The position numbers and the translations under genes are program-made. Under the pieces are notes generated by a model, which saw only the letters and a program-made list of their open reading frames with translations, ran no database searches and was not told where the DNA came from. Below, one piece after another: positions 31,451-55,607 of a DNA stretch of 64,000 nucleotides (position 1 is its first letter; each line of letters begins with the position of its first letter). The DNA is from Octopus sinensis (lineage: Eukaryota), in assembly GCF_006345805.1 (NCBI RefSeq), contig NC_043001.1, positions 132,370,001 to 132,434,000 of the forward strand. The letters are read 5' to 3'.

Positions 31451-31680
31451 CATTATTTACATTATTTATATTTGACGGATATTTGTCCTCTTCTTGTTTG
31501 TTGTTAACGCAATGTTTCGGTCGATATACCCTCCAGCCTTCATCAGGTGTCTTGAGGAAATTTTTAACTTGGGTTCTCATTCCTTAGGAAACGTTGTGTT
31601 AACAACAAACATGTTGAGGACAAATATCCGTCAAATGTAAATAATGTACATAATTCCTCATCTCTTAAATATAGAACTGT
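31451..31680. mobile_element. Penelope terminal-repeat remnant in inverted configuration, 12 bp TSD
   Basis: acgacttttaca at 31439-31450 and 31681-31692; removing the insert restores PNVKVVFLLPN; ~60 bp inverted arms (tttgacggatatttgtcctc / gaggacaaatatccgtcaaa). Confidence 0.85.
31505..31551 (-). ncRNA. Degenerate hammerhead motif in the Penelope remnant
   Basis: acac-CTGATGA-aggctggagggtatatcgacc-GAAAC-att-gcgtt; stems II and III mutated. Confidence 0.5.
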
Positions 31681-33194
31681 ACGACTTTTACATTAGGTTG
31701 TTCCAAATCTGGATGACCAGGTGTGTTGTCTATAAGTAAAAGGACTTTAAACTCAAGACCTTTATCTTCCATATATCTTCTTATTTCAAGAACAAATCAG
31801 TTGTTAGACCATTCAGTAAATATTTCTTCAGTCATCCATTTTTATTGGCTCTCCAATGAACAAGTAATTTACTTAAGACTGATCAGACAAACTGATCAAT
31901 TAATTAATAAGTGCTTTAATAAACAATCTCCTGAAGCATTGCTACATAACAAGAAAATTACATGGTCTTTAGCTGCCTTAAAACCACTGGCACTTTTCTC
32001 TAATTTTGCTATATACATTCTGTTTGGCTTTTTCTCCAAATGACATCAGTTTCATCTGCATTAAAAACTTAGTCTGAAATGTAACTGCCTTCTTCAATTA
32101 TTTTGGCTAGTTGTCGAAGGAATTCTTCAGTAGCAGTTTTATCTACCGATGAAATTTCATCTCCCATCTTTATATTATGCAGTGTGTGTCTTTCAAGGAA
32201 TTTTGTAAGCCATCTCATACTTGCAGCACATTCATTCTTCCTTTTATCACTAGACAGATGTAATGCACTTGATGACTCCAGATCATTAATCTTCTTGTAA
32301 TCTGTTTTAGGTATCCTTTTTTGGTTGTTTTCTTCTTTCCATATTATTAACGGTTTCTCCATTTTTTTATTGAATCATATCCCTTGTATATGATGACGAC
32401 TTGGCTGACAATTTTGTTCCAGAAGCTATAGATCTTCTAATGATGGCATCATTCCATTTGATCATTCTTATCGTAGCTTCATTCAGGCAGAAAGCTCTAC
32501 CCAAAGATGCTGCACTTTTGCGCTTATGAAGACAATCCAAAATATTGATCTTGGTTTCCAAAGAAATTGATGCTCTTTTATTTTTCTTAGATGTATCAAA
32601 CAACATTTTGGGGTAGGTTATCACTATCATGATCGCAAATAAAAAATATAGCAGAGGATTAAATATGCAACACGTCTTTCGTATTAGACCCAATGCTAAT
32701 GAATGCTGCTGCACGCCGTCTGATGGAGTGGTTACACACAGCGAGAGGTATGTACAGTGCATAGGTCCCACCCACACCAGAGAGTGGGGGATCACTGTAT
32801 GGAAAAAATAGATTGGATTCTATTTTACTTTGCTAAATTGTTACTTAATCATGCTATGTAAAGTCTCAGCATTTTGTAAATCATAATTGATTGATGTTAC
32901 TTCATTGTTTACTTGCCACTTGCAATAAATTCAGTGGTCACACAAGTACAGCTGTTTAAAGCATGTTAAAGTAAAAACAAATACTGCAAACAAATAATCG
33001 GTTCTTTTCGTTAAACTATGTTATTTCAAAACCGTGCCAAAAGAAAATTGAGTGTGTGTATGTATGTATATCTATATATATATATATATATATATATACA
33101 TGGTGGCTGCCTCCTCGTTATCGAGTATGGCCATTGCACGAAGCTTAATCAATGTTGTTATCGTGCAATGCCTGTGCAAGAAGATTTTTTTTAA

Positions 33195-33370
33195 CCCCTT
33201 ACCCGGCAGAAACGAATATATGCGTTTTGACCTAAATTGGTTTTTACTATCTCTGGCGAGTTAACTCGTCACAAGATAGACTCACCAAAATCGACAATTA
33301 AAAAAGAAAACAATTAAAAAATATGTCTGAAAAAATACATTTATTTTCAAAATAATTGTTGGGTAAGGGG
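33195..33370. mobile_element. TTAA MITE family 3
   Basis: TTAA|CCCCTTACCC...GGGTAAGGGG|TTAA, perfect 10 bp TIR. Confidence 0.9.
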
Positions 33371-33629
33371 TTAAAGTGAGGAAAGGCTTTGCACTGAGTC
33401 AATCTCACTCACTAATCAACAGCAGCCATAATCCGAAAAGAAGAACAAGTCAACATCATTGGTAGCCACTGAGCCGCAGATTTTATTTCGGAGTTATCCC
33501 AGTTACCTGTGTTACCTTCTCCTAGAAGGATGCCCTAACAAAGGCTAGGAGTCCTTCACTCCCAATGATTTAACCGCGCGATCAGGTATTCAGTTTGATT
33601 ATTTCTATGTCCCCATGCATGATACATGA

Positions 33630-33950
33630 TATGGCTCTGTGGTTAAAGTGTCAGACTCACAATCACGAGGTAGTGTGTTTGATTCCTGGATTGGGCTGTG
33701 TAATGTGTTATTGACCAAGACATTTCATGTTGTTCCAATTCACTGAGCTGTAGAAATGAGTTGCAACATCACTAGTGCCAAGCTGTATCGGCCTTTGCCC
33801 TTTCCTTGGATAACATCAGTGGCATGGAGAGGGGGACTGGTATGCATGGGTGACTACTGGTCTTCCATAAACAACGTTGCTCAGACTTGTGCCTCACAGG
33901 GAAAGTTTCTAGGTGCAATGCCATGATCATTCATGAACAAAGGAGATTTT
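33630..33950 (+). mobile_element. SINE family E
   Basis: Same head and body as 62660-63013. Confidence 0.8.
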
Positions 33951-33976
33951 TTACCCTATATATATACACACTCACG

Positions 33977-34022
<46 letters not shown>

Positions 34023-34423
34023 ACACACACACACATATTATGTCAGATATTGGTCTTGCACTACTGGTAACATATAAGACAGTACAATTTGCTGCATGGT
34101 TGGATCACTGGCAACTAAACTGGCAACATTGCTAAGCAAGCTTGGTGAGGTCACTCAACAGGATGAAAAACAAGACCTGTCAAAGGGTGGGAGAACGTAG
34201 GAGAGTCAACAGCAGAAAGAAACGGAATTCCTAAGGGACATTTTGTATTTTCATCCAGAATAGAAATGAGCATCATCCTGCCATGTGATCAGCTTGAAAA
34301 ATTATTAATATATTAAGATCGTTTTCTTAACATGAAACCAATGGTAGCCTTAATGCACAAATAAAGAAATTTTATCCACCAATGCAGTGTTGAGCATTCA
34401 TTCTCATCATTCGACACATATAC

Positions 34424-34459
<36 letters not shown>

Positions 34460-35071
34460 ATAATAATAAATGGCAAGTTTGTGTTTGTGAATTTGTTACT
34501 TTAATTCTTCCAAGACTATCCAACAGACCTTGATAAAACTTGACATATGTGTGTGTGTGTGGGGGGGTGTCTTATGTCCATGCGGTCACTTATGCACTAG
34601 AATTTTTAATCAGAATCGATTTTTAATCAGAATTGAATTTTCAAATACTGTAAAATTTCAGCATTTTTCACACAAGCCATCATGACATCAAATTGATGAA
34701 ACATGCCGAAATCATCATCATCATCATCATCATCATCGTTTAACATCCGCTTTCCATGCTAGCATGGGTTGGACGATTTGACTGATTTGGACGATTTGGC
34801 CGATTTGACAGATGGCTGCACCAGGCTCCAATCTGACCTGGCAGAGTTTCTACAGCTGGATGCCCTTCCAAACGCCAACCACTCTGAGAGTGTAGTGGGT
34901 GCTTTTATGTGCCACTGGCATGAGGGCCAGTCAGGCAGTACTGGCAACGACCTTGCTTGAATGTTTTTTTACATGCCACCAGCACAGGTGCCAGTAAGAC
35001 GATGCAGGTAACGATCAAGCTTGAAAGGTGCTTTTTATGTGCCACTGGCATGGAAGCCAGTTTGTTGCTCT

Positions 35072-35121
<50 letters not shown>

Positions 35122-36855
35122 CCTTATTTGTAAATTAAGGCCACCATTGATTTCATGTAAAGAAAATTAAGAAGATATCATAGTGTTTTAACAATTTTTC
35201 AAGCCAATCGTATGGAGAAAGGTATTTGATTCCATTTTGGAAAACAGTCTCACTTCTTTCACAGGGTTTCTTGTAAATTCACGTAAATAAAACAATGAAT
35301 CAATGAGTCACGGGACGTTACTCTTGAGTAGCATCTTTTGGATGTTTCGCTCCCTTGAATTTGTTTTTTGGGGAAATTTTTTTTGATCAATTTGTTTGCA
35401 TTATTTCGCATGATTTTGTTTTTGTTCCGGGCATGGTGTTCTTATACTTGTGTGCTGAGGTAATTCATCATTGGGGCATATTTCTTCTTTGAGTGAAGTT
35501 TGTGTGCTATGTGTGTTCACATTTAGGAAATGGGCTATCCTGGTAGGGTTACCCTCACACATAGTGGGCTCTTCTTTGAAATATTTGAGTGTAAAATATT
35601 GTTTGTGTATGCAGGGAGAGGTTTCATGTGTAATGCTTAGGCCAGTGCTTTTCAAACTTTTTGCTGGAGCGGAACCCCAAGGAAACATTCCACTGGCTTG
35701 AGGAACCCCTGTGCAATAATTTAATAGCCTTATGCACACATATCTGCACAGGAGAATTAAAAATTATTGCCGATTTTAGCAGTTTTGTAACTTCTTGCGG
35801 AACCCCTGGACTCTACTGGCGGAACCCTAAGGTTCCGCGGAACCCTGGTTGAAAACCACTGGCATAGGCTGTTGTCTGTTGATTATATAATGTTTAATTT
35901 TTCAGTAATACAGAGTTCACATCTGGTATCCCATCCTCTGTAATTTTTGTCTTTAGCAATGATTTTCCATTCTATTTGGGGGTTGCTTATTCTACTTTCT
36001 TTCAATGTCCATATCATATTTGAAAGGGATGTTGCATATTTTTTACTTTTGTCTCTGAATGATGCCAGATGTTGTGTATACCTTTCCTTGAATGAGTTGC
36101 TCATCATTCCTGTGTATGGTTTTTGCTATTCCATTGTGGTCCGTGATCTTGGCCTTAACTATGAGTTCTTTCTCAAGACAGTTGCTATTTAGAGGGCAGT
36201 GGTTTGTTTATCTACAGTTGCATTGTCTTTTGTGGGTGTTTCTGGTGTGTTTATGTTTATTGTGATTGAATATTTTTGTTCCTATATTGGGGAGGCAACT
36301 ATAGTTAACTTTCACAGTATTTCAGATGAAGATCTTGTGGTATTTATGTTAATGTGGAAAGTGATTGTCCATTAGTTTTAAGAATTTTCTATGTTAGTGG
36401 CTAGATTCATGCTATAAGGTGGATTGAACCAGAAGATTTTCTTCTGTCTGAGCCTTTTTGGTTTATTTATAGTTGATTCAATGTAGTGTATGCAATTCTT
36501 GAAGTTGGACCTTTCTAATACAGTATTATAATATGGGGGAAGCTTTTTCAAAAGTGCCTTTATTGACAGATAAATTGGAGACATGCCCGCTGATGTTGTT
36601 AACTATTTGTTTAATTACAGCTGGTGGGTGGTTCGAACCTATGTCTATGTTCAACACTTCCTTATTCTGTTTGTGGTAGGGTTTAAATTTTCCTGTGTTA
36701 AGATTCATGTTAATGTCTAGAAAGTTGGTTTCTTTAAGGTTTGTATTAATTGTGATTCTTAGGCCTAATTGGATAAATATATTGAGTAATTTTTTCCTTT
36801 TTCTATATATCATGTCCGTTTTTACTATGCATTACTCCCAGGCCATTGTCCCTAC
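35122..36855 (-). mobile_element. Penelope-like element (Naiad-like by motif), 5'-truncated at RT motif C, decayed
   Basis: GLCRDNGL (YRDDGL), NFLDI, SNHPP, WFNPPYS, NYSCLPN, CNCR..CPL..CL, FKERYTQH, CELCITEK (GIY-YIG); (TA)n on the flanks. Clade assignment is inferred from recalled motifs. Confidence 0.85.
35643..35861. mobile_element. hAT-type MITE inserted in the Penelope element
   Basis: TIR CAGTGCTTTTCAAAC / GTTGAAAACCACTG; 8 bp TSD gcttaggc / gcataggc. Confidence 0.9.
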
Positions 36856-37120
36856 ATAAACATGCCACTCTAGTGTAACATCCCTTTATTCATTGATTCA
36901 GTGTTTTATTTATGAGAATTTACAAGAAACTCCATGAATGAAACAAGACTGTTTTCCAAAATGGAAGTGTACACCTTCCTCCAAGTGATCAGCTTGAAAA
37001 ATTGTTAAGACTCTAGAATATATTTTCCTACTTTTCTTAGCATGAAACGAGTGGTAGCCTTAATTCACAAATAAAGAAATTATATCCACTAATGCAGTGT
37101 TGAGCACTCATTTCTATTGT
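36856..37120 (+). repeat. Inverted copy of the Penelope terminal segment (vs ~35122-35345); third copy ~34262-34420
   Basis: The reverse complement shares aacaatttttcaagc, ttccattttggaaaacagtct and gtttcttgtaaatt..taaataaaaca.tgaatcaatga. Confidence 0.8.
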
Positions 37121-37132
37121 TTGACATTTACA

Positions 37133-37171
37133 TGTGTGTGTGTGTATACACATATATATATATAATATATA

Positions 37172-37216
<45 letters not shown>

Positions 37217-37249
37217 GTATATATATGTGTATATATATAGATATATACC

Positions 37250-37281
<32 letters not shown>

Positions 37282-37487
37282 ACATATATATATATAATAT
37301 TATATATATACATCATATCATATATATGTATATATATACATATACATATGTATATATATATATACACATACATATATATATAATACATATATATATATAT
37401 ATATATACATTATATATATATGCATATATATACATGTATATACATGTATATACATATATATACATTATATATTATATATACATATGC

Positions 37488-37530
<43 letters not shown>

Positions 37531-37580
37531 TATGTGTATATATGTATATACATATATGTATATATACACATACATGCATA
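37133..37580. repeat. Long degenerate (TA)n array
   Basis: Direct reading; similar arrays at 48520-49130 and 59750-59955. Confidence 0.95.
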
Positions 37581-38208
37581 TCTATATACTACTAAAACTC
37601 TCTGATTGCTTGTTTGTCTGCCATTTAATACAGTCAAACTGGTGCATAATACTTTGAATTAAGTTACCCCTGAAATGTGAATACAATTGGAATAAAACAA
37701 GTTGAGCATAAATCAGACTAAGGATTCCTCAGGTTTTAAAGGTTTGGGGGATATTCATAAATACCCAAGTACCAAATAATGAGAAAATGCTCCGAAAATA
37801 ACATAACCCTAAAAGGGAAGAAACTCTAACCTTTCGATGTCTTCTGTAATTTGGAGACAATCTTCATTACCTGGACAAAAGTCTTAGTGACTTTAACTTG
37901 CCAATGGAAAAGTACAAGTTGTTTTTACAGTAAATGTTTCTATTTTCACTTTTGTTAAACACAATATTTAATCATTTAGAAATATTTTTAATTGAATGTG
38001 ATTTAAAAAATATAAGTTGTTTGTACAGTAAGTATTTGTATTTTAGCTTTGTTTAAACAGACAATATTTTAATTTTTTTTTTTTATTATTTTCAAGTGAA
38101 TACCACTACAAATTTTTGTTGGCATATTTAAAAATATTTTTAAGTGAAAATGACTTTAAAAATACAAATTGTTTGTACAGTGATTATTTGTATTTCAGCT
38201 TTCTTTAA

Positions 38209-38429
38209 CCCTTTAGTGTTCACATTATTCTGCCAAAGTTAATGCTTTTTTATCCACATTGTTTTGATCTAATCACGCATTATCTTGTAGCCATGAGATT
38301 TTAATGAGGTAGCTGTTAATTTTTAAAACGACATTGTAGGGTTGGTGTGAGAGACCAGATCTAGCCAGTTTGACCATAAAACAGGCAGAATACTTTTGGC
38401 CGGATATGGCCGGTTTAAATGCTAAAGGG
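38209..38429. mobile_element. TTAA MITE family 2
   Basis: TTAA|CCCTTTAG...CTAAAGGG|TTAA. Confidence 0.9.
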
Positions 38430-38454
38430 TTAAACAGACGATATTTTAATTATT

Positions 38455-39175
38455 AATGAGTAGGAAAATATTTCATAAAGGACCCATTCGTACCTCAGTG
38501 TGAAATAAGTTTTTTCCACAGGTCTTTTTTTTTGAGAGCATTCAATGTATCTCACCTCCAAACCTGCCACAAGCCACTTTTCTTCCAGAAAATGGAGTAG
38601 TGGTGGGGGCTTCATAATTTCCTGAGTTTCCCACCAACAAATTTTATATCGCTATTTTCTTTCTTTTCCAGGTTATTTTGCATGCTTTCAATGAATGTGA
38701 CATCAAAATCATGCATAAATGGCTCCTTTCCCAGAAATGGAAAGATTTGGCTGCTATTTCTAGCATGTACTTCTACCATGTAACAGCTATTTGCAACAAA
38801 GACCTGAAATAGCTGTTACATGGTAGCAAGGCATGCCAGAAATAGCAGCCAAATCTTTCCTTTTCTGTGGGAGAGAGCTGTGTACATATGATTTCCATGC
38901 CACATTCATTGAAAGCATGAGAAATAGCCTAGAAAAGAAAAAGAACTCACAGAAAAAATCCATTGGTGGGAAACTCGGAGATTCCCAGAAAATATAAGTT
39001 GTTTCCCAGAAAACTCAAAGGTCCCTACCACCCTTCCACCCTCTTCTTTTTCAGAAGGAAGTGGCTTACTGCATGTTTGGAGGTGAGATACATTGAATGC
39101 ATTCAAAAAAACCCGTGGAAAAATTATTTCACACCAAAGTATGAATGGGTCCTTTACAAAATATTTACCCAAGAT
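38455..39175. repeat. Old ~700 bp imperfect palindrome centred at ~38800
   Basis: Inner 54 bp arms 38739-38792 / 38807-38860 with 5 mismatches; homology continues outward with gaps. Confidence 0.85.
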
Positions 39176-39760: not shown

Positions 39761-39771
<11 letters not shown>

Positions 39772-39791
<20 letters not shown>

Positions 39792-39878
39792 TGTATGTAT
39801 GTATGTATGTATGTATGTATGTATGTATGTATGTATGTACGTACGTACGTACGTACGTACGTACGTATGTATGTATAG
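39772..39878 (+). repeat. (TATG)n with an internal (TACG)n block
   Basis: Direct reading. Confidence 0.97.
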
Positions 39879-42062: not shown

Positions 42063-43227
42063 CTTTAAGATAAAACAAAGGCGTTACCATTGTCATCTAA
42101 AATACTCTTTGTGTGCATTAAAGTCTGATCAAAGTGACACAAAATGATATTTTTTTAAAAAAGAAATTTACTCAAGCAGTTTGATTTATGACATTCAACA
42201 CTTAACTCAACTGCTCCATTTTCTATGGCTGCTATCTGTAGTTAAATTTCCTTCTTTGAAAAATGAAACTCTTTAATGTACACTATGTGCAGTCATGCAT
42301 CCATACTATGATCATTTTTAATGATAGTGTTAATATTTAAAAGAATAATAAATAAATAAAATATAACGCTAAAATCCTCAAGAAAAGTGAGACTTTTCAC
42401 TATTTTTCAAAGGACTGATTTTTTTTTTTCAGAAACAAACACCTAATTAACACATTAATAACAACACAGATCTAAAAGCAACTATGATACTATTAAGTAT
42501 CAAAGACTGCTCACAATATACCACCAATAAACAGCTGAATTATTTGAAGTAGTCAAACAGAAATATAAATCATTCTAAAAACTTTTCTACATATGAGAAG
42601 CAGAAAATTATTGTTTATTTTTACCTCATAAGATTATTGTGCATATTTAATTAATTAATGCTACAGGAATAAACTTTAAAGTATACTTCTTACAAGCAAA
42701 ATCAAAGCTGATTATGTCAACTTGATGCTAGTCTACCAGTCATAAAGTCAGTGGTTTATATGTCTTTAACACTATAGTGTCCATGGCCAAGACGTCTAGT
42801 CCTCACTAGCTTCAGTTATCATCAATTAGATCAGCTCTTTTGTTAATGCAAAAACTGCATAATTCATGCATTGGGTTAATGAAAAAACTGTTACTGTGTT
42901 ACATGAAATAGTGTGACTGTAAATACAATTAACTGAATTAATAAACCAGAGAAAACTTTAGAAGAAACAGCATGTATCAGCCATTGTGCTCAGAGAAAAG
43001 CTGGCCGAAAAGATTTAGACAAAGAAAAAGATTATAAAATGGAGACCTATCCAACCCATATCAGTGTGGTAAAATTTATGAAAAGGATGATACTGATGAA
43101 GCTGATGATTAGGGTTGTAGTCAGAGTAGGAATCGAAATTTAAATAGATAGTTAACTTCTAATTCACAGTTTTCAGTTTATGTAAAGAAACACCTATTTT
43201 GATGATGATGGTGATGATGATGATAAT

Positions 43228-43580
43228 CTTTTCTAAAATTTTGGGGAATGGGTAAATCGATTACATCAACCCCAGTGTTCCACTGATACTTAATTTATTA
43301 ATCATGAAAGGATGAAAGGCAAAGTCAACCTTGGCAGTACTTGAACTCAGAACATAAAGTTAGATGAAATACTACTAAGTATTTTGTCCAGCGTGCTAAC
43401 AATTCTGCCAGCTTACCACCTTCATAATAATAATAATAATAATAACAATAATAATAATAATAATAATAATAATGATGATTGACCTAATAATAAGGTTGAC
43501 TTTGCCTTTCATCCTTTCATGATTAATAAATTAAGTATCAGTGGAACACTGGGGTTGATGTAATCGATTTACCCATTCCC

Positions 43581-43620
<40 letters not shown>

Positions 43621-43851
43621 GTTATTATTATTATTGTCATCATCATTATTAGATAAGACAATAAGCTGGAAGAATTGTAAGCATGCCGGGTGAAATGCTT
43701 AGCGGTATTTCATCTGTCTTCGTGTTCTGAGTCCAAATGCCATTGGAGTCAACTTTGCCTTTCATGGTTAATAAATTAAGTACCAGTTATGCACTGGTGT
43801 CGATTGGTCCCCTCCCCCAAAATTTCAGGCCTTGTGCCTATAGCAGAAAGG

Positions 43852-43855: not shown

Positions 43856-43895
<40 letters not shown>

Positions 43896-44147
43896 CATTA
43901 TTATTATTATTATTAGAAGAAGAAGAGAAGAATAAGAAGCAAAGAAGAAGAAGAAGAAGAAGAAGAAGAAGAAGAAGAAGAAGAAAGAAGAAGAAGAAGA
44001 AGGAAGAAGAAGAAAGAAGAAGAAGAAGAAGAAGAGAAGAAGAAGAAGAAGAAGAAGAAGAAGAAGAGAAGAAGAAGAAGAAGAAAGAAGAAGAAGAAGA
44101 AGAAGAAGAAGAAGAAGAAGAAGAAGAAGAAGAAGAAGAAGAAGAAG
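43855..44147 (+). repeat. (ATT)n then long (GAA)n compound microsatellite
   Basis: Direct reading. Confidence 0.98.
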
Positions 44148-44149
44148 GT

Positions 44150-44520
44150 ATGGGCTTGTGCAGAGGCAGTATGGGCTAGAATGATCCAAGAAGTGGTATG
44201 AGCACCAACCTTTATCAGTCGCAGAGAATAATCAAGTGAAACTCACATACGATATGCCAATCTAAACAGATAAGAAGCTGCAACATAAGTAAACAGATAT
44301 CACTCTACTATAGAAGGAATCCAAAGAACAGACTTTCATCAACATAGCTATACCTGCAGACCAAAATATTGTAAAAACAGAAAACAAATCGAGAAGTACC
44401 AAGATCTAACATTGGAAGTGAAATGCATCCATAGAGCCACAATAGTCAGTGTGATACCGACTGTGATTGGCAATATTCTGGCATAAAGGGTCGCATCTCT
44501 AAACTGTGGAAAGGAGCTGA
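44150..44520 (+). mobile_element. R4/Dong-type RLE fragment
   Basis: KWYEHQPLSVAEN..YDMPI.TDKKL..DI..FINIAIPADQNI..EKYQDL. Confidence 0.8.
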
Positions 44521-44559
44521 GATGTGTCATAGATAACTCAAAAGATGAAAGGAAAATAG

Positions 44560-45410
44560 AAGGGGTATCATTAGATAGAAATAACTACTGGGGTGTCAAA
44601 CTGCTGGATCAGGTGATGAAGGTCACAGAGAGGGTCATAGCCCAATTAATTAAGGAGAGAGTCTGCTTAGATGAGATGCAGTTCGGTTTTGTGCCAGGTA
44701 GAAGCACCACCGATGCTATATTCCTGGTACGACAACTACAGGAGAAATACCTAGCCAAAGATACACCCCTATACTTGGCTTTGATCTCTCTGTATTTGCC
44801 AGCTCTTCTCAGTCACAGCATATCTCCAGAGGTCTCACTCTTTCATCATTGCCTCTGTGAAGCCCAACATTCAAAGTGGGCTTCACAGAGGCAATGACGA
44901 AAGAGTGAGACCTCTGGAGATATGCTGTGACTGAGAAGAGCTGGCAAATACAGAGAGATAACAGCTGTAGCCTACACCAGTGTTGCATAACCAGCCCACT
45001 CCACAAAGTACCTTTGGATCATAGGGTGACATGCTGTACTTGAGGAGACCTACTGAGTCAAGTACACCAAAATCAAATCAAACCACAATCAAATGGAAAT
45101 TGTAGTTGTGGCTGATGCCAGCACCACCTGTCTGGCTCCCTATGTCAGTGGCATGTAAAAGCACCATCCAAACGTGGTTGATGCCAGCCCCCTCTGGCTC
45201 CTGTGCTAATGGCATGTAAAAAGCACCTGCTACACTCTTGGAGTGGTTAGTGTTCGGAAGGGCATCCAGCTGCAGAAATACTGCCAGATCAGATTAGAGC
45301 CTTGGGCAGCCTCCTGGCTTCCCAGACCCCAGTCAAACCGTCCAACCCATGCCAGCAAGGAAAACGGACATTAAACGATGATGATGATGATGATGATGGT
45401 GATGATGATG
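44560..45410 (+). mobile_element. RTE-type LINE remnant: RT fragment, internal deletion with fold-back, ORF end, 3'UTR and (GAT)n tail
   Basis: MKVTERVIAQLIKERVCLDEMQFGFVPGRSTTDAIFLVRQLQEKY (RT domains 2-3); then GFTEAMTKE*DLWRYAVTEK; the UTR ends gcatccagctg...aacccatgcc...ttaaacgatgatgat. Confidence 0.85.
44784..44959. repeat. 176 bp palindrome (83 bp arms, 10 nt loop, 1 mismatch)
   Basis: Read directly; centre gaagccca-acattcaaag-tgggcttc. Confidence 0.97.
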
Positions 45411-45840: not shown

Positions 45841-45887
<47 letters not shown>

Positions 45888-46250
45888 ATTGTATATATAG
45901 GTTAAAGTAAAAAGGAAAGCAAACAAATTGGCAAGATTTGACAAGAACATTTAATTTAGTTATATAATGAGACATCCCTGATAGCTGTTTCTGGGGTGTC
46001 ATGCCATAGGAACATCGTGCAGAGCAAAGACTCCATATGCTGAGTATTCCATCATTGGAGAGAGATAACTAGATAGAGATAGGTTAAACATATGTAACAG
46101 TGGAATAAAAGTTCCTCATCAATGATAGTTGTCATGGCTCCTTAAGTCCAGAGAAGGAGGAGAGATCCAAATAAGTCCAGTTAGATCCAATGAGACTGGG
46201 ACTCATTAGGTAAATCCATGATCAGAGAGAATGGTTAAATAGTAATCCGT

Positions 46251-46634
46251 GGAGGTGCAATAGCCCAGTGGTTAGGGCAGCGGACTCGCAGTCATAGGAT
46301 CACGGTTTCGATTCCCAGACCGGGCGTTGTAAGTGTTTATTGAGCGAAAACACCTAAAAGCTCCACGAGGCTCCGGCAGGGGATGGTGGTGATCCCTGCT
46401 GTACTCTTTCACCACAACTTTCTCTCACTCTTTCTTCCTGTTTCTGTTGTACCTGTATTTCAAAGGGCCAGCCTTGTTACTCTCTGTGTCACGCTGAATA
46501 TCCCCGGGAACTACATTAAGGGTGCACGTGTCTGTGGAATGCTCAGCCACTTACACGTTAATTTCACGAGCAGGCTGTTCTGTTGATTCGGATCAACCGG
46601 AACCCTCATCGTCGTTACCGACAGAGTGCTTCCA
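46251..46634 (+). mobile_element. SINE family C
   Basis: Full-length copy. Confidence 0.9.
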
Positions 46635-48631
46635 TCATCCATCAGTAATCCAATGTGAGGAAGAAAATGGATTCTAGCAGTTCCAAAGATGGATAAAAAC
46701 TGAGAGGAGAAAGTACACTCTGGTGGGAGAGAGATAGGTAGATGGGAGTTTTAGTGGTATGCCTATTTGAGCACTCAGAGCACATACCTATTTTGTATGT
46801 GCTCTGATGAAAACTCTTTGTATCTTTATAAATATACTTTATTTTATCCAAACATATGGAGAGAAAAAAAGAGGTGTAGGGAGAGACAGATTAAGTAATA
46901 GCTCTATATACAGTGGGTCATGCATTTGTTAGAAGGAACTGTTAAATAAAAAACTATACAAAGATAATGTAAGATACAGAATGAGTAATTGTATTCCATA
47001 GAATATACAGATATATTTCTAAAAAAAAAACAAACTAAGCAAGAGGAGAGTGAAGAATTATTTAAGGTTGATGAATAGGAATTTGGTCATGTGTTTACAT
47101 GAGAAAATATATATATACATATATATATATATATATTTAGACGGACAGACAGATATATACATATATGTATATTTATTTATTTATTTAGACAGACAGATAC
47201 ATATATATATATATATATACATATCTCTGTGCGTGTGTCTTTTGTTTGTTCATATTTGTTCCCCATCACCGCTTGACAAATGGTACTGGTTTGTTTACAT
47301 TCCTGTCACTTAGCAGTTCAGCAACAAATTTCAATAAAATAAGAACCAGATTTATAGGTAAAAAAAATATACTGGGTTGATTTGTATGACTAAACCTTTC
47401 AAGACAGTGCCCCAGCATGGCCACAATCCTATAATTGAAACAAGTATCAGATAATATATATATATATATAAAAGGTAGCTGAATCAAAGGCAATGTATTT
47501 TTCAAGAGAAATATAATAAAAGAGCGGATGACAGTATGTAACTTAATTCTCAATTACATTTCAATATATCTCATAACTGTCTCTTTAAATAAAACTGTTC
47601 AAATTACATGCTTATAAGTCACATCAGTTGATATTTTGAATCAACTCCATTGATTTTATTAGTCTTCATAAATGACACTTAAAAAACAATTTGATAACAT
47701 GTAGACAGAAGTTATGAATTAATTTTTTCCAAAACGTAATAAGTGTGACATTGAAATTCAATAAATATATTTTGACTCCACGGATTTTTCTATTGTTAAA
47801 TAACCCTTTATATTATCAATTTTGGTTTAGACTGTGTATCTTTATTTGGTTTATGGAATCTATCAAATCTCATTAAAGCCATAATCCAGTAGGGAATTTA
47901 CAGAATCATGAGACAATTTCTTATTGGTACAGAGAATTTTAGGCTAATCCTAGCAAACCTAGACTGCAACTGTAAGGGGTCTGCACCTTGTTCGGTTCCT
48001 TTTGTTGATCCCTCTTATCATGAAAACCTCAGATAAGCCTCAGATTACATAAATAGCTGTGCTGGATGCATATAAAGGCAGGCAGGCATGCATGTAGATT
48101 GTCTTTAGCTCTTATGACATGCACCTACTTGTAAACCCATACATCATAATATAACAATTTAATGTTATCATAGTTATTGCAACTGGTGAAGAAAATGTCT
48201 AAAAATATTAACTGACAAACTGCTATTTAAAATTAATCTCAGCTACAGGCTACAATAATGGTTGATGCCAACTGTGACATGATGACGGAAGGATTCCAGC
48301 TGAACAAACATGATTTGCATGTAAGTGCACAACCCTATGACCTGTTACAAGCTGAAGATACATTTTCCAGCTTTCATATCAATTTGCCAGTGAAATAAAT
48401 CTGTTAAGATAACTATGTGCAATGGGATCATGTGTGCATGTTCACTAATAAAGCAACTCACGAGAATATGAATATATTGTGTGATTATAATGTTGCATAT
48501 TAAATGCAACACAACAGTTAAAATTATATATATATATATTTATATATATACACATATGCACATACATACATATATATATATATACATACATACATACATA
48601 CATATATATATATACATACATACATACATAC

Positions 48632-48663
<32 letters not shown>

Positions 48664-48719
48664 ACACATATATATATATATGTGTGTATCTTTATATGTA
48701 TATATTTTTATATACATAC

Positions 48720-48761
<42 letters not shown>

Positions 48762-48765
48762 AAAC

Positions 48766-48810
<45 letters not shown>

Positions 48811-48856
48811 ATGTATGTATGTATGTATGTATATAAAAATATATACATATAAAGAT

Positions 48857-48890
<34 letters not shown>

Positions 48891-48977
48891 GCACATATGT
48901 ATACAGAGTTAAATAGATATATACACACATATGCCTACAGACATGTGTGTGTGTGTATGCATATGTATGTATATATG

Positions 48978-49031
<54 letters not shown>

Positions 49032-49637
49032 AACACATATAAACACATATATACAAATACTTACAAACACATACAAACACATATAAACACATATATACAA
49101 ACACATATAAAACAGCCAAACAACTGGCATATAATGCAAACAAGATGGAAATCTATGTATGAATTAATATAGTGATAGCATTGTAATAAGCATGTATCAA
49201 CATAATGAACTATAGAAATACCAAACATTATTATGTATGACAGTCTCCTCACTGTATGAACAAACAAGACGATGCATTAGCCTCATAGTCCAATACATAA
49301 AAATGCTTGTATTGTGATAAATAATTACATTACATGAAATAATCTATTACCATATTTAGAAAAACATGATCAACTTAAACAAACAATGTCATCAGATTTG
49401 TTCAGAGAAATTTTATCGAAAATATAAATGTTAGTGTAATTATTTACGTGTTGTTTTATAGATGTCCATAAAAGCAGCAACCATAAAGTAATGAATAAAT
49501 ATTACTGGAAATAAAATCAGTATAGATGCCCAACCCCCAACTCACAACACCCTACCTGATATGTTGGTGGTCTACCTTTTCTTTGAACACACTGACTTCT
49601 ATCAGTTCAAATTTTATATATACACATATACATGTGT

Positions 49638-49674
<37 letters not shown>

Positions 49675-49733
49675 AACTTACTGTAATTCTGTTATTCACC
49701 CTAAGTGATCTCTGGTGCTTGTTACTGCTTGGT

Positions 49734-50117
49734 GGAGGCGCAATGGCCCAGTGGTTAGGGCAGTGGACTCGCGGTCGTAGGATCGCGGTTTCGATTCCCA
49801 GACCGGGCGCTGTGAGTGTTTATTGAGCGAAAACACCTAAAAGCTCCATGAGGCTCCGGCAGGGGATGGTGGTGATCCCTGCTGTACTTTTTCACCACAA
49901 CTTTCTCTCACTCTTACTTCCTGTTTCTGTTGTACCTGTATTTCAAGGGGCCAGCCTTGTCACTCTCTGTGTCACGCTGAATATCCCCGAGAACTACATT
50001 AAGGGTGCACGTGTCTGTGGAGTGCTCAGCCACTTACACGTTAATTTCACGAGCAGGCTGTTCCATTGATTCGGATCAACCGGAACCCTCATCGTCATAA
50101 CCGACGGAGTGCTTCCA
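49734..50117 (+). mobile_element. SINE family C
   Basis: Full-length copy. Confidence 0.9.
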
Positions 50118-50723
50118 CTACTGCTTGATGCATTTAGCCAGAACCCGGACTGTACCTGACAGCTCTTACAGTAACCACCTGGATAATTTGTCCCTATATA
50201 CTCATTGTGTGTATATATACACACATTCAAGTCATTTACAGTCACTGCCAACCATGTATGTATACAATTTATGTACGGTGACAGCAGCAGCAGATCCCCT
50301 CAGCTCTTATTTCTAGCAGTGTAGGTGTTCTGACACCCTCAGTCATATTCAATGACAATTATTGCTTTCGTTTTTGGTGAAACTCTGCTGATTAGCTGTC
50401 TCATTTAATTATATATAATGACTGGCCATTGCCAGCCTCGCCTGGCCCCTGTGCCGGTGGCACATAAAAAGCACCATCCGACCGTGGCCATTTGCCAGCC
50501 CCATCTGGCACCTGTGCCGGTGGCATGTATAAAGCACCCACTACACTCATGGAGTGGTTGGCGTTAGGAAGGGCATCCAGCCATAGAAACATTGCATGAT
50601 CAGACTGGGCCTGGTGCAGCCTTCTGGCTTCCCAGACGCCGGTTGAACCGTCCAACCCATGCTAGCATGGAAAATGGACGCTAAATGATGATGATGATGA
50701 TGATGATATATATATATATATAC

Positions 50724-50763
<40 letters not shown>

Positions 50764-52151
50764 GCAATTATGGGGATAAGCAAATTAGACACCTCAAATA
50801 TATTAAATATATTAAATATATCAAATACAAATTATGTATATATGTATACATACAAAACGAGAGAAAGCAAAAGGTGGAAACTTTCAGATGATGAATTTAC
50901 ATGTATAAATATATATATATTTATATAATTAGGTTCAACTTACACAGAATACAAACAATAGAAAATTAAAAGGGTGGAAAAGAGGTATTAAAAGTCCAAC
51001 AGCTGTTTCTGAGAGCTCAGCAATCCATAATATTGTTGGTAGATTTAGTCCATTACAAAATGTGGCCATATGGATGCATTTAGCATAGGGTGAAACAAGC
51101 CTCCATCATCATTGGACCTCTCTGCATTAAGATCTGAAATGTAAGATCTAGTCTACCCTGATGACCTGATGCAGATACCTGGTTGAGTTGGTGTGTTACT
51201 TGAATTGCTGATGCATACACCCAAGTGTTTGCATCTATTCACATAAGAATATCACATGGAGAATTTTTGGAATGTCTTGCAAATCTTGGATTTAGAGAAT
51301 TTGCCTCAGTTTCTTTTGCTCTTTCTGCATGAAACTGAATATTTCTAGGCAAATTTGTTGGTACATAACCTATCGGTGCTCTTATTGGTAAGGTGATGCA
51401 AAAGTATGCAATGGACATTGTAGCATTATCAGAGACTAGATTTCTTGGACAGGGTAATTTTACTGAGAAATCCAGTGGCTACACGTTTTATTGGAGTGGG
51501 AAATAAGAAAAAGAAAATTGCAAAAACAGAAAGCGGTGTTGCTTTTGCTCTGAAAACCTCCTTGGTTAAGTTAGAGGAATTACCATACAGTATAAATGAT
51601 AGAATAATATTGCTGAAGTTGCCTTTAAAAAAAGGTCAGTATGTAACACCTGTTAGTGTTTATGCACCAACTATGGATGCACGTGAAAATGAAAAGATCT
51701 TCTTTTATGCTGTGCTGAAAGAAAATATCCACAAAATTCCACATGTGGATAATATTATCATATTGGGTGATTTTAATGCTAGAGTTGGTAAAGATTATGA
51801 GACGTGAGGTGTAATTGGAAGACATGGAGTGGAAAATTGTAAAAGCAATGGCTTACATTTGTTACAGATATGTTCTGAGCTGAATCTACTTATTATGAGC
51901 ACTACTTTTCAGCAAAAAGATAAGTTCAAAACTACATGGATGCACCCCAGTTCAAAATGATGGCACCTGATAGACTATATGATAACTAGACAGCAAGATA
52001 AGAGAGATTGCTGTATATTGTGGGTTGTGCAGAGAGCAGAATATTGGGCAGATTACCACTTGGTTCATGGGAAGATCAAGTTTGTAGTGATACCAAAACT
52101 TAGACAAGGTGGCACTGGCATCCCTAAACGTCTGAATGTGAATCTCCTTAA

Positions 52152-52372
52152 CCCTTTCATTACCGTATTTATTTTGAGATGCTCTGAGTTTCTTTCAATT
52201 ATTTTAAATATAACAAAGAATTTAGTAAAATAACTTAGTTATCATTAAGCTAGTGTTAGGAACATAACTTGTGACTAATGTTTAATGGAAAATTTTAATT
52301 CAAAACTTATGAAAACAACACATTTGTACTACAGAGCCAGAGCCGGTTTCAGCCGGGTTGGTAACAAAAGGG
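52152..52372. mobile_element. TTAA-specific (piggyBac-like) MITE family 1, inserted in the RTE
   Basis: TTAA|CCCTTTCATTACC...GGTAACAAAAGGG|TTAA; removal restores RLNVNLLKNK. A decayed reverse copy lies at ~2050-2275. Confidence 0.9.
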
Positions 52373-52791
52373 TTAAGAATAAAACAGTTTGAGTAGAATT
52401 TCATTAGAAAATCGAAAATTTGGATTGGACAGGTGAGTGGATGGACTTCAGAGGACACCTATACAATTTACATAAAGAAGCTTTAGGAAGAAAGAAGAAA
52501 AAAACATCAAGATTGGTTTGATGAAAGTGATGGAAATATTCAACATTTGTTGGAAGAAAAAAGAAAGGCACTGCATTCATTACTAGCAAATGATTCTGAT
52601 CAAAATAGAACTTTTTTTAAAGAGATAAAAGCAGATGCGCAAAGAAAGATTCAAAGCATGCAGGTGGCAGAAGAATGCAGAAGAGATAGAGGTGGCTTCC
52701 AATGTTAAGAACACTAAGTTATTATATACTCTCCTTTTGATGTGTATGGGCCATCATGTCCTACTTTGGCTCATGTGAAGAATAGGAGTAG

Positions 52792-53025
52792 TTATTTCTT
52801 CACTACCCACAAGGGGCTAAACACAGAGGGGACAAACAAGGACAGACAAACGGATTAAGTCGGTTATATCGACCCCAGTGCATAACTGGTACTTAATTTA
52901 TCGACCCCGAAAGGATGAAAGGTAAAGTCGACCTCGGCAGAATTTGAACTCAGAACGTAATGCCAGACAAAATACGACTATGCATTTCACCCGGCATGCT
53001 AACGTTTCTGCCAGCTCGCCGCCTT
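52792..53025 (-). mobile_element. SINE family B inserted in the RTE LINE
   Basis: Full-length copy; aagaatagga is repeated on both flanks (probable TSD). Confidence 0.9.
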
Positions 53026-53771
53026 AAAAGAATAGGAATGGTGTTTTATTGAAGGAGCCCAAAGACATCTGAAAACGATGGGAGGAACATTTCAATGAAC
53101 TTCTGAATCGACCATCAGTTGTTGATGAAAAAGTATTGATATGGTTCTATAGAATGCACCCAATGAGTGCTTAGTGGAGGAAACAATAAAAGCAGTATCA
53201 AAATTGAACATTGGCAAAGCACTGGGAGTTGATAGCCTGAATGTAGAACTATCTAAGTTTCGGATGTGGGGTACTACTTGCAAGAAATGCTGACCACAGT
53301 AATACAGAGGTTATGGAAAAATGAAGTTATGCCAAAAGACTGGAAGGATGCAATCATGGAAGTTGTGTTCAAGGGTAAGGGACAACAGGATGAATGCCAT
53401 AACTTTCATGGTATTTGCCTGCTTACTACAGCCAGTAAAGTAAACTAGAAGACCACCTATGGTCTAGACATGGTATTTCCAATGCGACAAAGATTAAGGT
53501 ATGCAATATATGTATCTTAACCTCTTTATTGTATGCTTGCAAAACCTGGACTGTGTATTGTAAGCACTTAAAACTTATGGAACATTTTCATCAACAATGT
53601 CTCAGAAGGATTTTGAGGATCAGCTGAAAAACGTTTGTAAGTGCGATGAGGTGCTTGAAAGAAGGAAATGCTTCAGTATTGAAGCTTTGCCATTGCAGTA
53701 CAGATTGAGATGGAGTGGATACTTAGTCAGAATGACAGACAACAGAATGCCTAAATGACTTTTTACAGAGA

Positions 53772-53997
53772 ATTGGCAAGAGGTAAGTGTCCGTCCCACA
53801 TACCAAAGATGAGGTACAAAGATTGTCTGAAGTTGAGATTGAATAAGAAAAAAGATCCAATTGACAACTGGGAAGATTTAGCATATTGGCAAGAGGTAAG
53901 TGTCCGTCCCACATACCAAAGATGAGGTACAAAGATTGTCTGAAGTTGAGATTGAATAAGAAAAAAGATCCAATTGACAACTGGGAAGATTTAGCAT
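53772..53997 (+). repeat. Exact 113 bp tandem duplication inside the RTE
   Basis: 53772-53884 = 53885-53997; junction homology attggcaag / attgccaag. Confidence 0.95.
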
Positions 53998-54449
53998 ATT
54001 GCCAAGAAAAATGGGAAAAAGTTGTGTATGAAGGCAAAAATGAATTTGAAAGGCAAAGAATGGAGCATGCAAAGATCAAAAGAAAGATGAGAAAATGTGA
54101 CAGGAATGATGTTCTAACAATCATTAATGAACGTGATGAATGTGGAAAGATTTGTCTTAGTGAGGTTGGGCTAAAGAGCCATATGAAATCACACTTTGCA
54201 CAACCACACACTGATTATAGATGGACTGATGATTTTGAATGCATACAAAGTGACTTGAAAAAGCATAGTAAAATTCATTGAGCTGAAAAACTATACAAGC
54301 ACCAAGTTTTCTTGGACTAATTGTCAAAAAGCATGCAAGTCTTTGGCAGGCCTCAAAAGCCATATTCGTGCAGCTCATTGATGGTATTCTAGGGCATAAA
54401 GAAATTAGGCAATTTCTACTCAAAATCGAGTTGGCAACCATCATGTGTG

Positions 54450-55607
54450 TACGTATGTATGCATGCATGTCATTATTCAGTTTTATTTCAGAATTTCTTG
54501 CCAATAGAGAAAGAGCTGGTTTCAACATCAACAGGATATTTTTCTATGTACTTATGTATATATTACATTATATAATTAGGGCTTAGTAAAATAAATTACT
54601 TTGCCACATACTGAACTAAGTAGAAATAGCAGCCAAAAAAATTTTTTTTAGCCCTTTCCACTACTTAAAGAAAATTTCTCTCAGATAATGTTTACTCCAG
54701 ACAGCTCACAGCTTCGTGAGCTGTCTGGAGTAAACATTATCTGAGAGAAATTTTCTTTAAGTAGTGGAAAGGGCTACAAAAAATTTTTTTGGCTGCTATT
54801 TCTACTTAGTTCAGTATGTGGCAAAGTAATTTATTTTACTAAGCCCTAATTATATAATGTAATATTTTGAATTCGCCTTAAATGGTCCTTTTACATACTG
54901 AACACTTGGTGAAATTGATTAATTAATTTTACCCTCAATTGTTGATACTTATGTATATATGTAGATTTGTACGTTTTGTACTATGTATGATTATCATGCA
55001 TATACTTGCATGTCTAGACATGCTCATATATGCTTAAATGACAAATTTCTGGAAAGTTTTACAGATTTTTACAGTTCCAGTGATGACTTGGACCTGTTGT
55101 CTTCAAGTCAACTTCCTTCTTTTTGATTTTGAGATGCTTAACTTCTCAAGATTGGTATTTAGGCAGTGTGTTGCATATCCCAGGGCCCCAATAATGACAG
55201 GTATAAACCTGAACTTGTAATTTGGATAGAGTAGCAGTAGATTCCTCAATAGTTCTGCGTAGGTATTTTCTTTTTCACTGATCTTTTATTTTACGTTGAC
55301 ATCCACTGGGCAGCTGATTTCCACAAATGTACACAGTTTCTCTTTTCTAACACAAATCACTATGTCAGGTCTGTTATTTTTACATTTTATTGGGATTTTC
55401 TCTGGGGCGTTCCACCAGTAGTCCTTTTTATTATCAGTGGCTATGGCTTCCATCATATTGTGGGTTCTTATTTCTTTGGCCTTGGGGTCATCCTTCTGAT
55501 AGATCTCATTATACAGTGTCCTAGCTACATCATGTCCCATTCATAGATAATACCATGATGATATTTTCAGACAACTGCTTATGATGTGGTGATATCTTCG
55601 GGGGCTC
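54450..55607 (-). mobile_element. R4/Dong-type RLE element, 3' part with 3'UTR (second subfamily), interrupted at 54564-54945
   Basis: HIISSC..HDVARTLY, YWWN..NNRPDIVI...FVEISCPVDVNV, FIPVIIGALG (PD-(D/E)xK nuclease); the UTR ends aaactgaataatgacatgcatgcatac. Confidence 0.85.
54560..54865. repeat. 306 bp palindrome (150 bp arms, 6 nt spacer, 1 mismatch)
   Basis: Read directly; centre cagctcac-agcttc-gtgagctg. Confidence 0.97.

What the first reader, a model, noticed from the sequence alone, without database searches (positions are those of the whole stretch)
31451..54865. Recurrent short-range fold-back inverted duplications across unrelated elements
Seen: within ~24 kb there are inverted duplications in five different sequence classes. 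They lie in a Penelope remnant (31.5k), a SINE (43.2-43.6k), an RTE LINE (44.8-45.0k), a TA array (48.7-48.9k) and an insert in an R4 UTR (54.6-54.9k), with an older one in a Helitron (38.5-39.2k). Four have 0-1 mismatches. Established: long perfect palindromes are usually unstable, and coleoid cephalopods edit RNA extensively through ADAR, which needs dsRNA. Inference: a frequent snap-back or template-switch process, during retro-integration or break repair, may keep seeding intronic hairpins in this lineage.
Basis: partly seen in the sequence, partly recalled or inferred. Interest (0 to 1): 0.72.

Follow-up and report, generated by a model that had tools for sequence, protein, structure and literature searches.

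The report
Fold-back duplications of mixed origin
Six hairpin-forming inverted duplications in unrelated sequences are really there, but they come from at least two known processes: fold-back copying during retro-insertion at two sites, and local copying errors at microsatellites or a breakpoint at three others.

Summary
All six inverted duplications exist at the stated coordinates; 30 shuffles of the window gave none. Three host labels are not supported. The 31 kb host is a Tigger DNA transposon, not Penelope. The "R4" is a LINE with an APE-type endonuclease. No Helitron domain was found.

The six units are unrelated in sequence and fall into groups.
(A) 31 kb and 54 kb are discrete insertions flanked by 12- and 15-bp target-site duplications (TSDs), laid out TSD|arm|loop|arm'|tail|TSD. 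Removing the 31 kb insert in silico restores the Tigger transposase frame exactly. This layout matches cDNA snap-back before 5'-junction formation, a documented outcome of target-primed reverse transcription.
(B) 43, 44 and 48 kb have no TSD. Two sit in microsatellites and one at a breakpoint, which fits DNA-level template switching or fold-back repair.
(C) 38 kb is an old palindrome of unknown origin.

Young direct duplications are about as common in the window, so nothing points to a fold-back-specific process. Cephalopod origin, intronic location and any ADAR link could not be verified. No same-genome DNA could be reached. Verdict: real, partly well interpreted, known kinds of event.

The parts
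31439..31450 (+). Left copy of the 12-bp target-site duplication ACGACTTTTACA (31 kb insert)
   Evidence: Exact direct repeat. The 12-mer occurs only at these two sites in the window.
31451..31680 (+). 230-bp insert: 1 nt filler, inverted arm 31452-31518, 69-nt loop, sense arm 31588-31654, 26-nt tail 31655-31680
   Evidence: Arms 67 nt with 7 mismatches. Deleting 31451-31692 restores the Tigger transposase frame ...IDNTPGHPDLEQP|NVKVVFLLPNTTS..., which aligns without a gap to Tigger1-like P0134.
31681..31692 (+). Right copy of the 12-bp TSD
31094..32819 (-). Host of the 31 kb insert: decayed pogo/Tigger-type DNA transposon (CENP-B_N, HTH, DDE_1)
   Evidence: Pfam hits. The reconstructed transposase is 47% identical over 99% of its length to Tigger1-like proteins, E about 1e-121.
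38466..39166 (.). Old palindrome of about 700 bp (arms about 80% identical, 14-nt centre near 38800); origin unknown
   Evidence: No TSD, no other copy in the window, no Pfam domain.
43227..43420 (-). Full-length tRNA-derived SINE copy (SINE1); its 3' part, 43242-43332, is the left arm
   Evidence: Alignment A1 with six other copies that are 77-85% identical.
43424..43479 (+). (AAT)n tract, the inverted counterpart of the (ATT)n at 43583-43650
   Evidence: The order is A..B A' B', interleaved rather than nested.
43492..43582 (+). Right arm: 91-nt inverted copy of SINE1, 91/91 identical, with abrupt ends on both sides
   Evidence: It shares SINE1's private substitutions, and there is no SINE remnant beyond either end. 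No TSD.
44493..44792 (+). RTE-like RT fragment (N-terminal half only) that ends where the hairpin begins
   Evidence: tblastn with 120 homologues. All stop at or before about 44792 and the RT never resumes in the window.
44784..44959 (.). Hairpin: arms 44784-44866 and 44877-44959 (83 nt, 1 CpG/TpG mismatch), spacer ACATTCAAAG
   Evidence: No TSD. A diverged single-copy relative of the arm lies at 57613-57677.
48681..48863 (.). Inverted duplication inside TA/TG microsatellites: exact 42-nt arms 48681-48722 and 48822-48863, 99-nt microsatellite spacer
54549..54563 (+). Left copy of the 15-bp TSD TACTTATGTATATAT. Its last 4 nt (ATAT) also pair with the end of the right arm, giving junction microhomology.
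   Evidence: The exact 15-mer occurs only at these two sites. An exact flanking repeat this long occurs at 2% of random loci.
54564..54945 (+). 382-bp insert: inverted arm to 54709, loop AGCTTC, sense arm 54716-54865, 80-nt tail 54866-54945
54946..54960 (+). Right copy of the 15-bp TSD
51424..54290 (+). Decayed LINE upstream of the 54 kb insert: APE endonuclease, RT remnants, RLRWSGYLVRM...C2H2 C-terminus. Not R4.

Best explanation
The cluster is a mixed set of fold-back (inverted) duplications made by at least two known routes.

Route A (31 kb and 54 kb). These are retro-type insertions. After target-primed first-strand synthesis stopped, the 3' end of the nascent cDNA folded back and copied the cDNA itself. 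It was then joined to the upstream target end. This leaves TSD | antisense arm | loop | sense arm | 3' tail | TSD. Shown: the TSDs, the asymmetric layout, the 31 kb empty site, and 4 nt of junction microhomology at 54 kb. Inferred: that an RT made the arms, and that the inserts are 5'-truncated retroelement copies.

Route B (43, 48 and 44 kb). These are DNA-level copies made in place, without TSDs. A polymerase switched template or strand at a stalled fork or broken end. Two of the events lie in AAT/ATT or TA/TG microsatellites, and the third lies at the broken end of a LINE fragment. Shown: no TSD; the 43 kb arm is a copy of one particular SINE copy; the interleaved order at 43 kb; the microsatellite context. 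Inferred: the replication or repair mechanism.

The 38 kb palindrome is an old event whose route cannot be determined. Young direct duplications nearby suggest general local template-switch duplication, not a dedicated fold-back process.
For: The hairpins are real and non-random. The units are unrelated to each other.

31 kb: a 12-bp TSD that is unique in the window. In-silico excision restores the DDE_1 core without a gap, and the whole reconstructed transposase matches Tigger1-like proteins at E about 1e-121.

54 kb: a 15-bp TSD found only at the two flanks, empirical chance about 2%, and an ATAT overlap at the 5' junction.

Both inserts carry the tail on one side only. This differs from the symmetric TSD of a control MITE.

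Snap-back cDNA synthesis before 5'-junction formation is a documented class of insertion junction (PMC11371274).

43 kb: the arms are 91/91 identical while family copies are 77-85% identical. The arms share private substitutions and homology ends abruptly.

Internal control: the 385-nt SINE pairs at 16.6/18.1 kb and 60.5/61.4 kb have arm identity equal to family identity, 94-96%.

The 44 kb arm has a non-hairpin relative elsewhere in the window, and its single mismatch is a CpG/TpG change.

Direct young duplications: 26686-28487, 53772-54007 and 55326/57368.
Against: No other copy of any hairpin unit could be examined. So I cannot exclude that the 31 kb and 54 kb inserts are full-length members of small retroelement families with a built-in 5' hairpin. 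Neither insert was assigned to a known LINE or SINE, and neither ends in a recognisable 3' tail motif.

The 54 kb TSD is TA-rich and lies in microsatellite-like DNA.

The three near-perfect hairpins could not be checked against raw reads.

The 43 kb structure could also be read as snap-back after full-length cDNA synthesis followed by extra template jumps.

The polarity argument at 44 kb rests on a 71% match over 65 nt.
Confidence: 0.6

Rival explanations
1. One reading: one frequent, lineage-specific snap-back or template-switch process keeps seeding intronic hairpins in a coleoid cephalopod genome, feeding ADAR editing.
For: Six events of different ages lie within 24 kb in unrelated sequences. 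The strict hairpin density is 4.7 per 100 kb, against 0.6 per 100 kb in 344 kb of other invertebrate DNA. All six would form very stable dsRNA if transcribed.
Against: The loci split into TSD-bearing and TSD-less classes. Direct young duplications are as common as inverted ones. The window was selected for its hairpins, so the density comparison is biased. The controls include a perfect 480-nt palindrome and a locus with 10 looser hairpins. The lineage was not verified: the named relatives are a mantis shrimp and other arthropods. Transcription, intron status and editing are untested.
Confidence: 0.12
2. The three near-perfect hairpins (43, 44 and 54 kb) are assembly or library artefacts (fold-back chimeras), not real genomic structures.
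For: Arms have 0-1 mismatches, and two of the three spacers are only 6-10 nt (159 nt at 43 kb). Long perfect palindromes are expected to be unstable (general knowledge). The 54 kb mismatch lies in a T-run and could be a consensus error. Complex inverted structures are known to trouble assemblies (PMC8557442).
Against: The 54 kb hairpin sits inside an insert with a 15-bp TSD and junction microhomology, which an assembler would not invent. The 44 kb mismatch is a CpG/TpG transition, typical of real mutation. The 43 kb structure is interleaved and complex rather than a simple fold-back. Older analogues (31 kb at 10% and 38 kb at about 20% arm divergence) show that such events do occur in this genome.
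Confidence: 0.13
3. The 31, 38 and 54 kb units are copies of mobile-element families with a built-in hairpin (hairpin-bearing SINE-like elements, MITEs or foldback elements), so no fold-back event happened at these sites.
For: Each is a discrete unit, and two have TSDs. Hairpin-shaped MITEs are common; a control locus shows one with a symmetric 8-bp TSD.
Against: The TSDs are 12 and 15 bp and differ in length, unlike the fixed short TSDs of DNA transposons (general knowledge). The layout is asymmetric, with a 26- or 80-nt tail on one side only. No second copy of any unit exists in 64 kb, although other repeat families have 6-7 copies. The three units are unrelated to each other.
Confidence: 0.15

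Closest known systems
cDNA snap-back 5' junctions in target-primed reverse transcription (described for R2-protein-mediated insertions, PMC11371274)
   Same: An antisense copy of the insert's own 5'-proximal sequence lies between the upstream target DNA and the sense insert. The sense part runs to the 3' junction. The 5' join is untidy, with microhomology or filler bases.
   Different: Here the events are natural and genomic, in unidentified elements without a recognisable 3' module. RT involvement is inferred, not shown. The target sites are not rDNA.
Inverted 5'-truncated copies at Penelope-like element insertions (PMC8557442)
   Same: An inverted partial copy lies immediately 5' of the sense copy, and insertion occurs near microsatellites.
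   Different: There is no PLE RT, GIY-YIG domain or hammerhead ribozyme. The inverted arm lacks the element's last 26 or 80 nt, so it is not a second copy primed from its own 3' end. The 31 kb host is a Tigger element.
Replication-based template switching or fold-back priming that produces inverted duplications (FoSTeS/MMBIR-type events; fold-back inversions at breaks). Named from my own knowledge.
   Same: No TSD, abrupt junctions, association with fork-stalling microsatellites, several switches (the interleaved order at 43 kb), and loss of adjacent sequence (44 kb).
   Different: The scale is small (42-91-nt arms). Junction microhomology could not be established.
L1 twin priming (5' inversions). 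Named from my own knowledge.
   Same: An inverted 5' segment within a TSD-flanked retro-insertion.
   Different: In twin priming the inverted segment comes from a more 5' part of the RNA, with at most a small overlap. Here the inverted arm is a complete duplicate of the adjoining sense arm.

Membership tests
TPRT insertion with 5' cDNA snap-back | A variable-length target-site duplication flanks the whole insert | tested here: met
   12 bp at 31 kb and 15 bp at 54 kb, each found only at the two flanking sites. The 31 kb empty site is proven by frame restoration. Not met at 38, 43, 44 or 48 kb.
TPRT insertion with 5' cDNA snap-back | The antisense arm abuts the upstream TSD, and the sense arm runs into a unique 3' tail that reaches the downstream TSD | tested here: met
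   31 kb: the arm starts 1 nt after the TSD and the tail is 26 nt. 54 kb: the arm overlaps the TSD by 4 nt and the tail is 80 nt.
TPRT insertion with 5' cDNA snap-back | The insert is a (5'-truncated) copy of an identifiable retroelement RNA | tested here: inconclusive
   No match to any LINE or SINE in the window, no Rfam family, and no genome-wide data available.
MITE / foldback DNA transposon | A short TSD of fixed length lies directly against both terminal inverted repeats | tested here: not met
   The TSDs are 12 and 15 bp, and the right TSD is separated from the arm by 26 or 80 nt. Compare the control MITE in L011, which has a symmetric 8-bp TSD.
MITE / foldback DNA transposon | Multiple dispersed copies with the same termini | tested here: inconclusive
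   There are none in the 64-kb window.
Penelope-like element terminal structure | PLE RT or GIY-YIG coding sequence, or a hammerhead ribozyme in the repeat | tested here: not met
   The Pfam scan of 29-42 kb found only Tigger domains. Rfam found no hammerhead at either gathering or permissive threshold.
L1-type twin priming | The inverted segment derives from RNA upstream of the sense segment and is not a duplicate of it | tested here: not met
   The arms are duplicates of each other over 67 and 150 nt.
Chance inverted pair of independent same-family insertions | Arm identity is about equal to the identity between dispersed family copies | tested here: not met
   43 kb arms are 100% identical, against 77-85% for the family. 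This feature is met only by the 385-nt SINE pairs at 16.6/18.1 kb and 60.5/61.4 kb, which are not part of the finding.
Replication/repair template-switch inverted duplication | No TSD, and the copy is made from adjacent DNA after that DNA was in place | tested here: met
   43 kb: shared private substitutions and abrupt ends. 43, 44 and 48 kb: no TSD.
Replication/repair template-switch inverted duplication | Microhomology at the switch points, judged against the ancestral sequence | not testable with these tools
   This needs the pre-event allele or an orthologous locus.
ADAR dsRNA substrate | Transcribed as one RNA, with clustered A-to-G differences between RNA and DNA | not testable with these tools
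   Only folding potential could be computed.

The most novel reading that the evidence does not exclude
This genome, whatever its lineage, has an unusually high rate of polymerase fold-back. The fold-back occurs both at retro-integration and at microsatellite-stalled forks. It continually creates perfect 80-150-bp hairpins that are transcribed and act as a renewable source of long dsRNA for ADAR editing or RNAi.
Probability: 0.1. Interest if true: 0.7.

Novelty: new member of a known kind. Interest (0 to 1): 0.33.

Why it matters
If the Route A reading is right, these are natural genomic examples of cDNA snap-back at retrotransposon 5' junctions. That outcome has so far been documented mainly in engineered insertion systems. 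The 31 kb case is unusually clean because the host reading frame proves the empty site. Such events create long, perfect hairpins in one step. These hairpins are potential fragile sites and potential dsRNA sources. The broader claim, that a lineage makes them at high rate to feed RNA editing, would be important. It is not supported by anything measurable in this one pre-selected window.

Tried and rejected
(1) BLAST self-comparison missed the 44 kb palindrome, so I replaced it with my own finder.

(2) Exact look-up of 10 window ORFs in the protein collection, to find independent assemblies: none were present.

(3) The RTE homologues are at most 71% identical. Their contig L001 shares no SINEs with the window, and its intact LINE belongs to another family.

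(4) The LINE C-terminus search gave mantis-shrimp hits at 74-80%, but that locus shares only the LINE, at about 75% nucleotide identity.

(5) Probes from the abundant 385-nt SINE found nothing in the metagenome contigs (two scans) or the prokaryote genome contigs. SINE sequence strings found nothing in paper full texts. The organism is therefore unidentified.

(6) Relatedness among the hairpin units: the 16-17-mer shared by the 38 kb and 54 kb units lies within the shuffle range, so relatedness is rejected.

(7) Degenerate TSDs at 38, 43 and 44 kb: none were found. A null allowing up to 2 mismatches is uninformative because of the microsatellites.

(8) Gene conversion between old inverted SINEs at 43 kb: rejected, because homology ends abruptly with no diverged SINE beyond.

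(9) Rfam and tRNA scans: no family at gathering threshold. The permissive hits are generic hairpin matches far below threshold.

(10) P0069 seemed to extend into the 44 kb arm, but its tail is unrelated.


Full report
OBSERVATION

- 31452-31518 / 31588-31654: 67 nt, 7 mismatches, 69-nt spacer.
- 38466-39166: a nested palindrome about 80% identical, centred near 38800.
- 43242-43332 / 43492-43582: 91 nt, 0 mismatches, 159-nt spacer.
- 44784-44866 / 44877-44959: 83 nt, 1 mismatch, 10-nt spacer.
- 48681-48722 / 48822-48863: an exact 42-nt pair inside TA/TG arrays, 99-nt spacer.
- 54560-54709 / 54716-54865: 150 nt, 1 mismatch, 6-nt spacer.

The statement that four have 0-1 mismatches is correct. 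Thirty dinucleotide-preserving shuffles (global and in 500-nt blocks) gave no non-low-complexity inverted repeats, against 19 in the real sequence. As RNA, all six would fold far more stably than shuffled controls (z from -15 to -41).

INTERNAL CALIBRATION

The window also has larger inverted pairs outside the finding, at 16.6/18.1 kb and 60.5/61.4 kb. They belong to a 385-nt tRNA-derived SINE with seven copies and 8-11-bp TSDs. Arm identity (94-96%) equals the identity between dispersed copies (93-96%), so these pairs are ordinary independent insertions. No dispersed pair in the window exceeds about 96%. The three hairpins at 98.8% or higher are therefore local events.

Young direct local duplications are about as common: a 925-nt tandem at 26686-28487 (98.4%), a 123-nt tandem at 53772-54007 (99.2%), and 197-nt repeats at 55326/57368 (98%). 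Short-range pairs overall number 19 inverted and 14 direct. There is no orientation bias.

HOST LABELS

The SINE, the RTE-like RT and the TA array hold. Three labels do not.

The 31 kb host is a decayed pogo/Tigger transposon on the minus strand, with CENP-B_N and DDE_1 domains. The 'R4' LINE has an APE-type endonuclease and an RLRWSGYLVRM...C2H2 C-terminus; by my own knowledge, R4-clade elements carry a restriction-like endonuclease instead. No Helitron or Penelope domain was found between 29 and 42 kb, and no hammerhead ribozyme anywhere.

GROUP A: 31 KB AND 54 KB

Both hairpins lie inside discrete inserts bounded by exact direct repeats: ACGACTTTTACA (12 bp) and TACTTATGTATATAT (15 bp). Each repeat occurs only at its two flanking positions in the window. 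Exact flanking repeats of these lengths occur at 3.2% and 2.0% of random loci.

The layout is the same in both: TSD | arm | loop | arm' | unique tail (26 or 80 nt) | TSD.

For 31 kb there is an independent proof. Deleting 31451-31692 in silico restores the transposase frame ...KVLLLIDNTPGHPDLEQP|NVKVVFLLPNTTSMIQPLHQGII.... That sequence aligns without a gap to a Tigger1-like protein, and the whole reconstructed protein matches such proteins over 99% of its length (E about 1e-121).

At 54 kb the last four bases of the TSD (ATAT) also pair with the end of the right arm, which gives 4 nt of microhomology at the 5' junction.

The tail on one side and the long, unequal TSDs do not fit MITEs; a control MITE with a symmetric 8-bp TSD is shown. 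Twin priming does not fit because the arms are duplicates of each other. Penelope-type double copies do not fit because the inverted arm lacks the last 26 or 80 nt.

The layout is what cDNA snap-back predicts: the nascent first strand folds back, copies itself, and is then joined to the upstream target. This class of 5' junction is documented for R2-protein-mediated insertion (PMC11371274).

What is inferred rather than shown is that an RT made the arms, and that the inserts are truncated retroelement copies. Neither insert matches any element in the window.

GROUP B: 43, 48 AND 44 KB

None of these has a TSD.

At 43 kb the right arm is 91/91 identical to part of a SINE copy whose relatives in the window are only 77-85% identical. 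It shares that copy's private substitutions, and homology stops abruptly at both ends with no diverged SINE beyond. This rules out a second insertion and gene conversion between old copies. The arm lies between an (AAT)n tract and its inverted (ATT)n counterpart, so the order is A..B A' B' (interleaved). That needs several template switches.

At 48 kb the exact 42-nt arms sit in TA/TG arrays.

At 44 kb the hairpin begins exactly where an RTE-like RT fragment breaks off after ...LYLA, and the RT never resumes. The arm has a diverged, single-copy relative at 57613-57677, within a LINE C-terminal module, so the hairpin is not a family feature. If that weak match gives the right polarity, the two sense copies converge on the centre, which is the opposite of a 5' snap-back. 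The one mismatch is a CpG/TpG change, typical of real mutation.

These features fit DNA-level template switching or fold-back priming at stalled forks or breaks. This assignment is an inference.

GROUP C: 38 KB

The palindrome of about 700 bp has no TSD, no paralogue and no domain. Its origin is open.

LINEAGE AND DENSITY

I could not confirm a cephalopod origin. The best named relatives of the window's LINE are mantis-shrimp proteins at 74-80% identity, and those of the Tigger element are arthropod proteins at 47%. Neither source shares the window's SINEs. Probes for same-organism DNA found nothing.

The window was selected for this feature, however. The controls are also heterogeneous, and they include a perfect 480-nt palindrome and a locus with ten looser hairpins. 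The comparison cannot support lineage-level enrichment.

VERDICT

The structures are real and non-random, and fold-back copying has recurred here over time. At least two known mechanisms are involved. Direct duplications are equally frequent. The ADAR, intron and cephalopod parts of the interpretation are untested. The cleanest single result is the 31 kb insert, a natural example, proven by its empty site, of an insertion with the snap-back layout.

Noticed in passing
window 26686-28487: Tandem duplication of about 880 bp (925 nt aligned, 98.4% identical). The unit boundaries coincide with TA microsatellite arrays at about 26.6, 27.57 and 28.45 kb.
   Followed up: partly
window 53772-54007: 123-nt segments (99.2% identical) offset by 113 nt, forming a tandem duplication inside the LINE C-terminal coding region. 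The peptide ARGKCPSHIPKMRYKDCLKLRLNKKKDPIDNWEDLAY appears twice.
   Followed up: partly
window 55326-55522 and 57368-57564: 197-nt direct repeats, 98% identical and 1.8 kb apart. They overlap a LINE C-terminal module (..KDYWWNAPEKIPIKCKNNRPDIVI..). This could be an LTR-like or pseudo-LTR structure, or a segmental duplication.
   Followed up: no
window 16614-16996, 18140-18522, 46249-46634, 49732-50117, 60483-60865, 61356-61738 (partial copies at 29712-29900 and 18718-18838): A young, abundant tRNA-derived SINE of about 385 nt (93-96% identity between copies, 8-11-bp TSDs, no A-tail). It is the youngest dispersed family in the window.
   Followed up: partly
window 28552-29166 (minus strand): The LINE C-terminal ORF is 74-80% identical at protein level to 'uncharacterized' proteins of the mantis shrimp Oratosquilla oratoria. 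That is surprisingly close if the window really is from a mollusc. It suggests either horizontal transfer of this LINE or a wrong lineage assumption.
   Followed up: partly
window 43940-45400: A mosaic of short same-strand fragments: (GAA)n, a LINE C-terminal module (FINIAIPADQNIVKTENKIEKYQDL..VIPTVIGN), a 300-bp RTE RT fragment, the hairpin, 147 nt of unknown sequence, and a SINE with a (GAT)n tail. It suggests a complex rearrangement or serial template jumps.
   Followed up: partly
L013 15884-16847 (Toxorhynchites rutilus, GCA_029784135.1, CM056649.1): A perfect 480-nt-arm palindrome with a 4-nt spacer and no flanking TSD, in a control mosquito locus. Near-perfect fold-backs are not unique to the window's genome (or assembly).
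   Followed up: partly
L005 (Cordylochernes scorpioides, GCA_030710605.1): Ten hairpins with arms of 40-97 nt and spacers under 200 nt within 30 kb, probably MITEs. This shows how much hairpin density varies between genomes.
   Followed up: no
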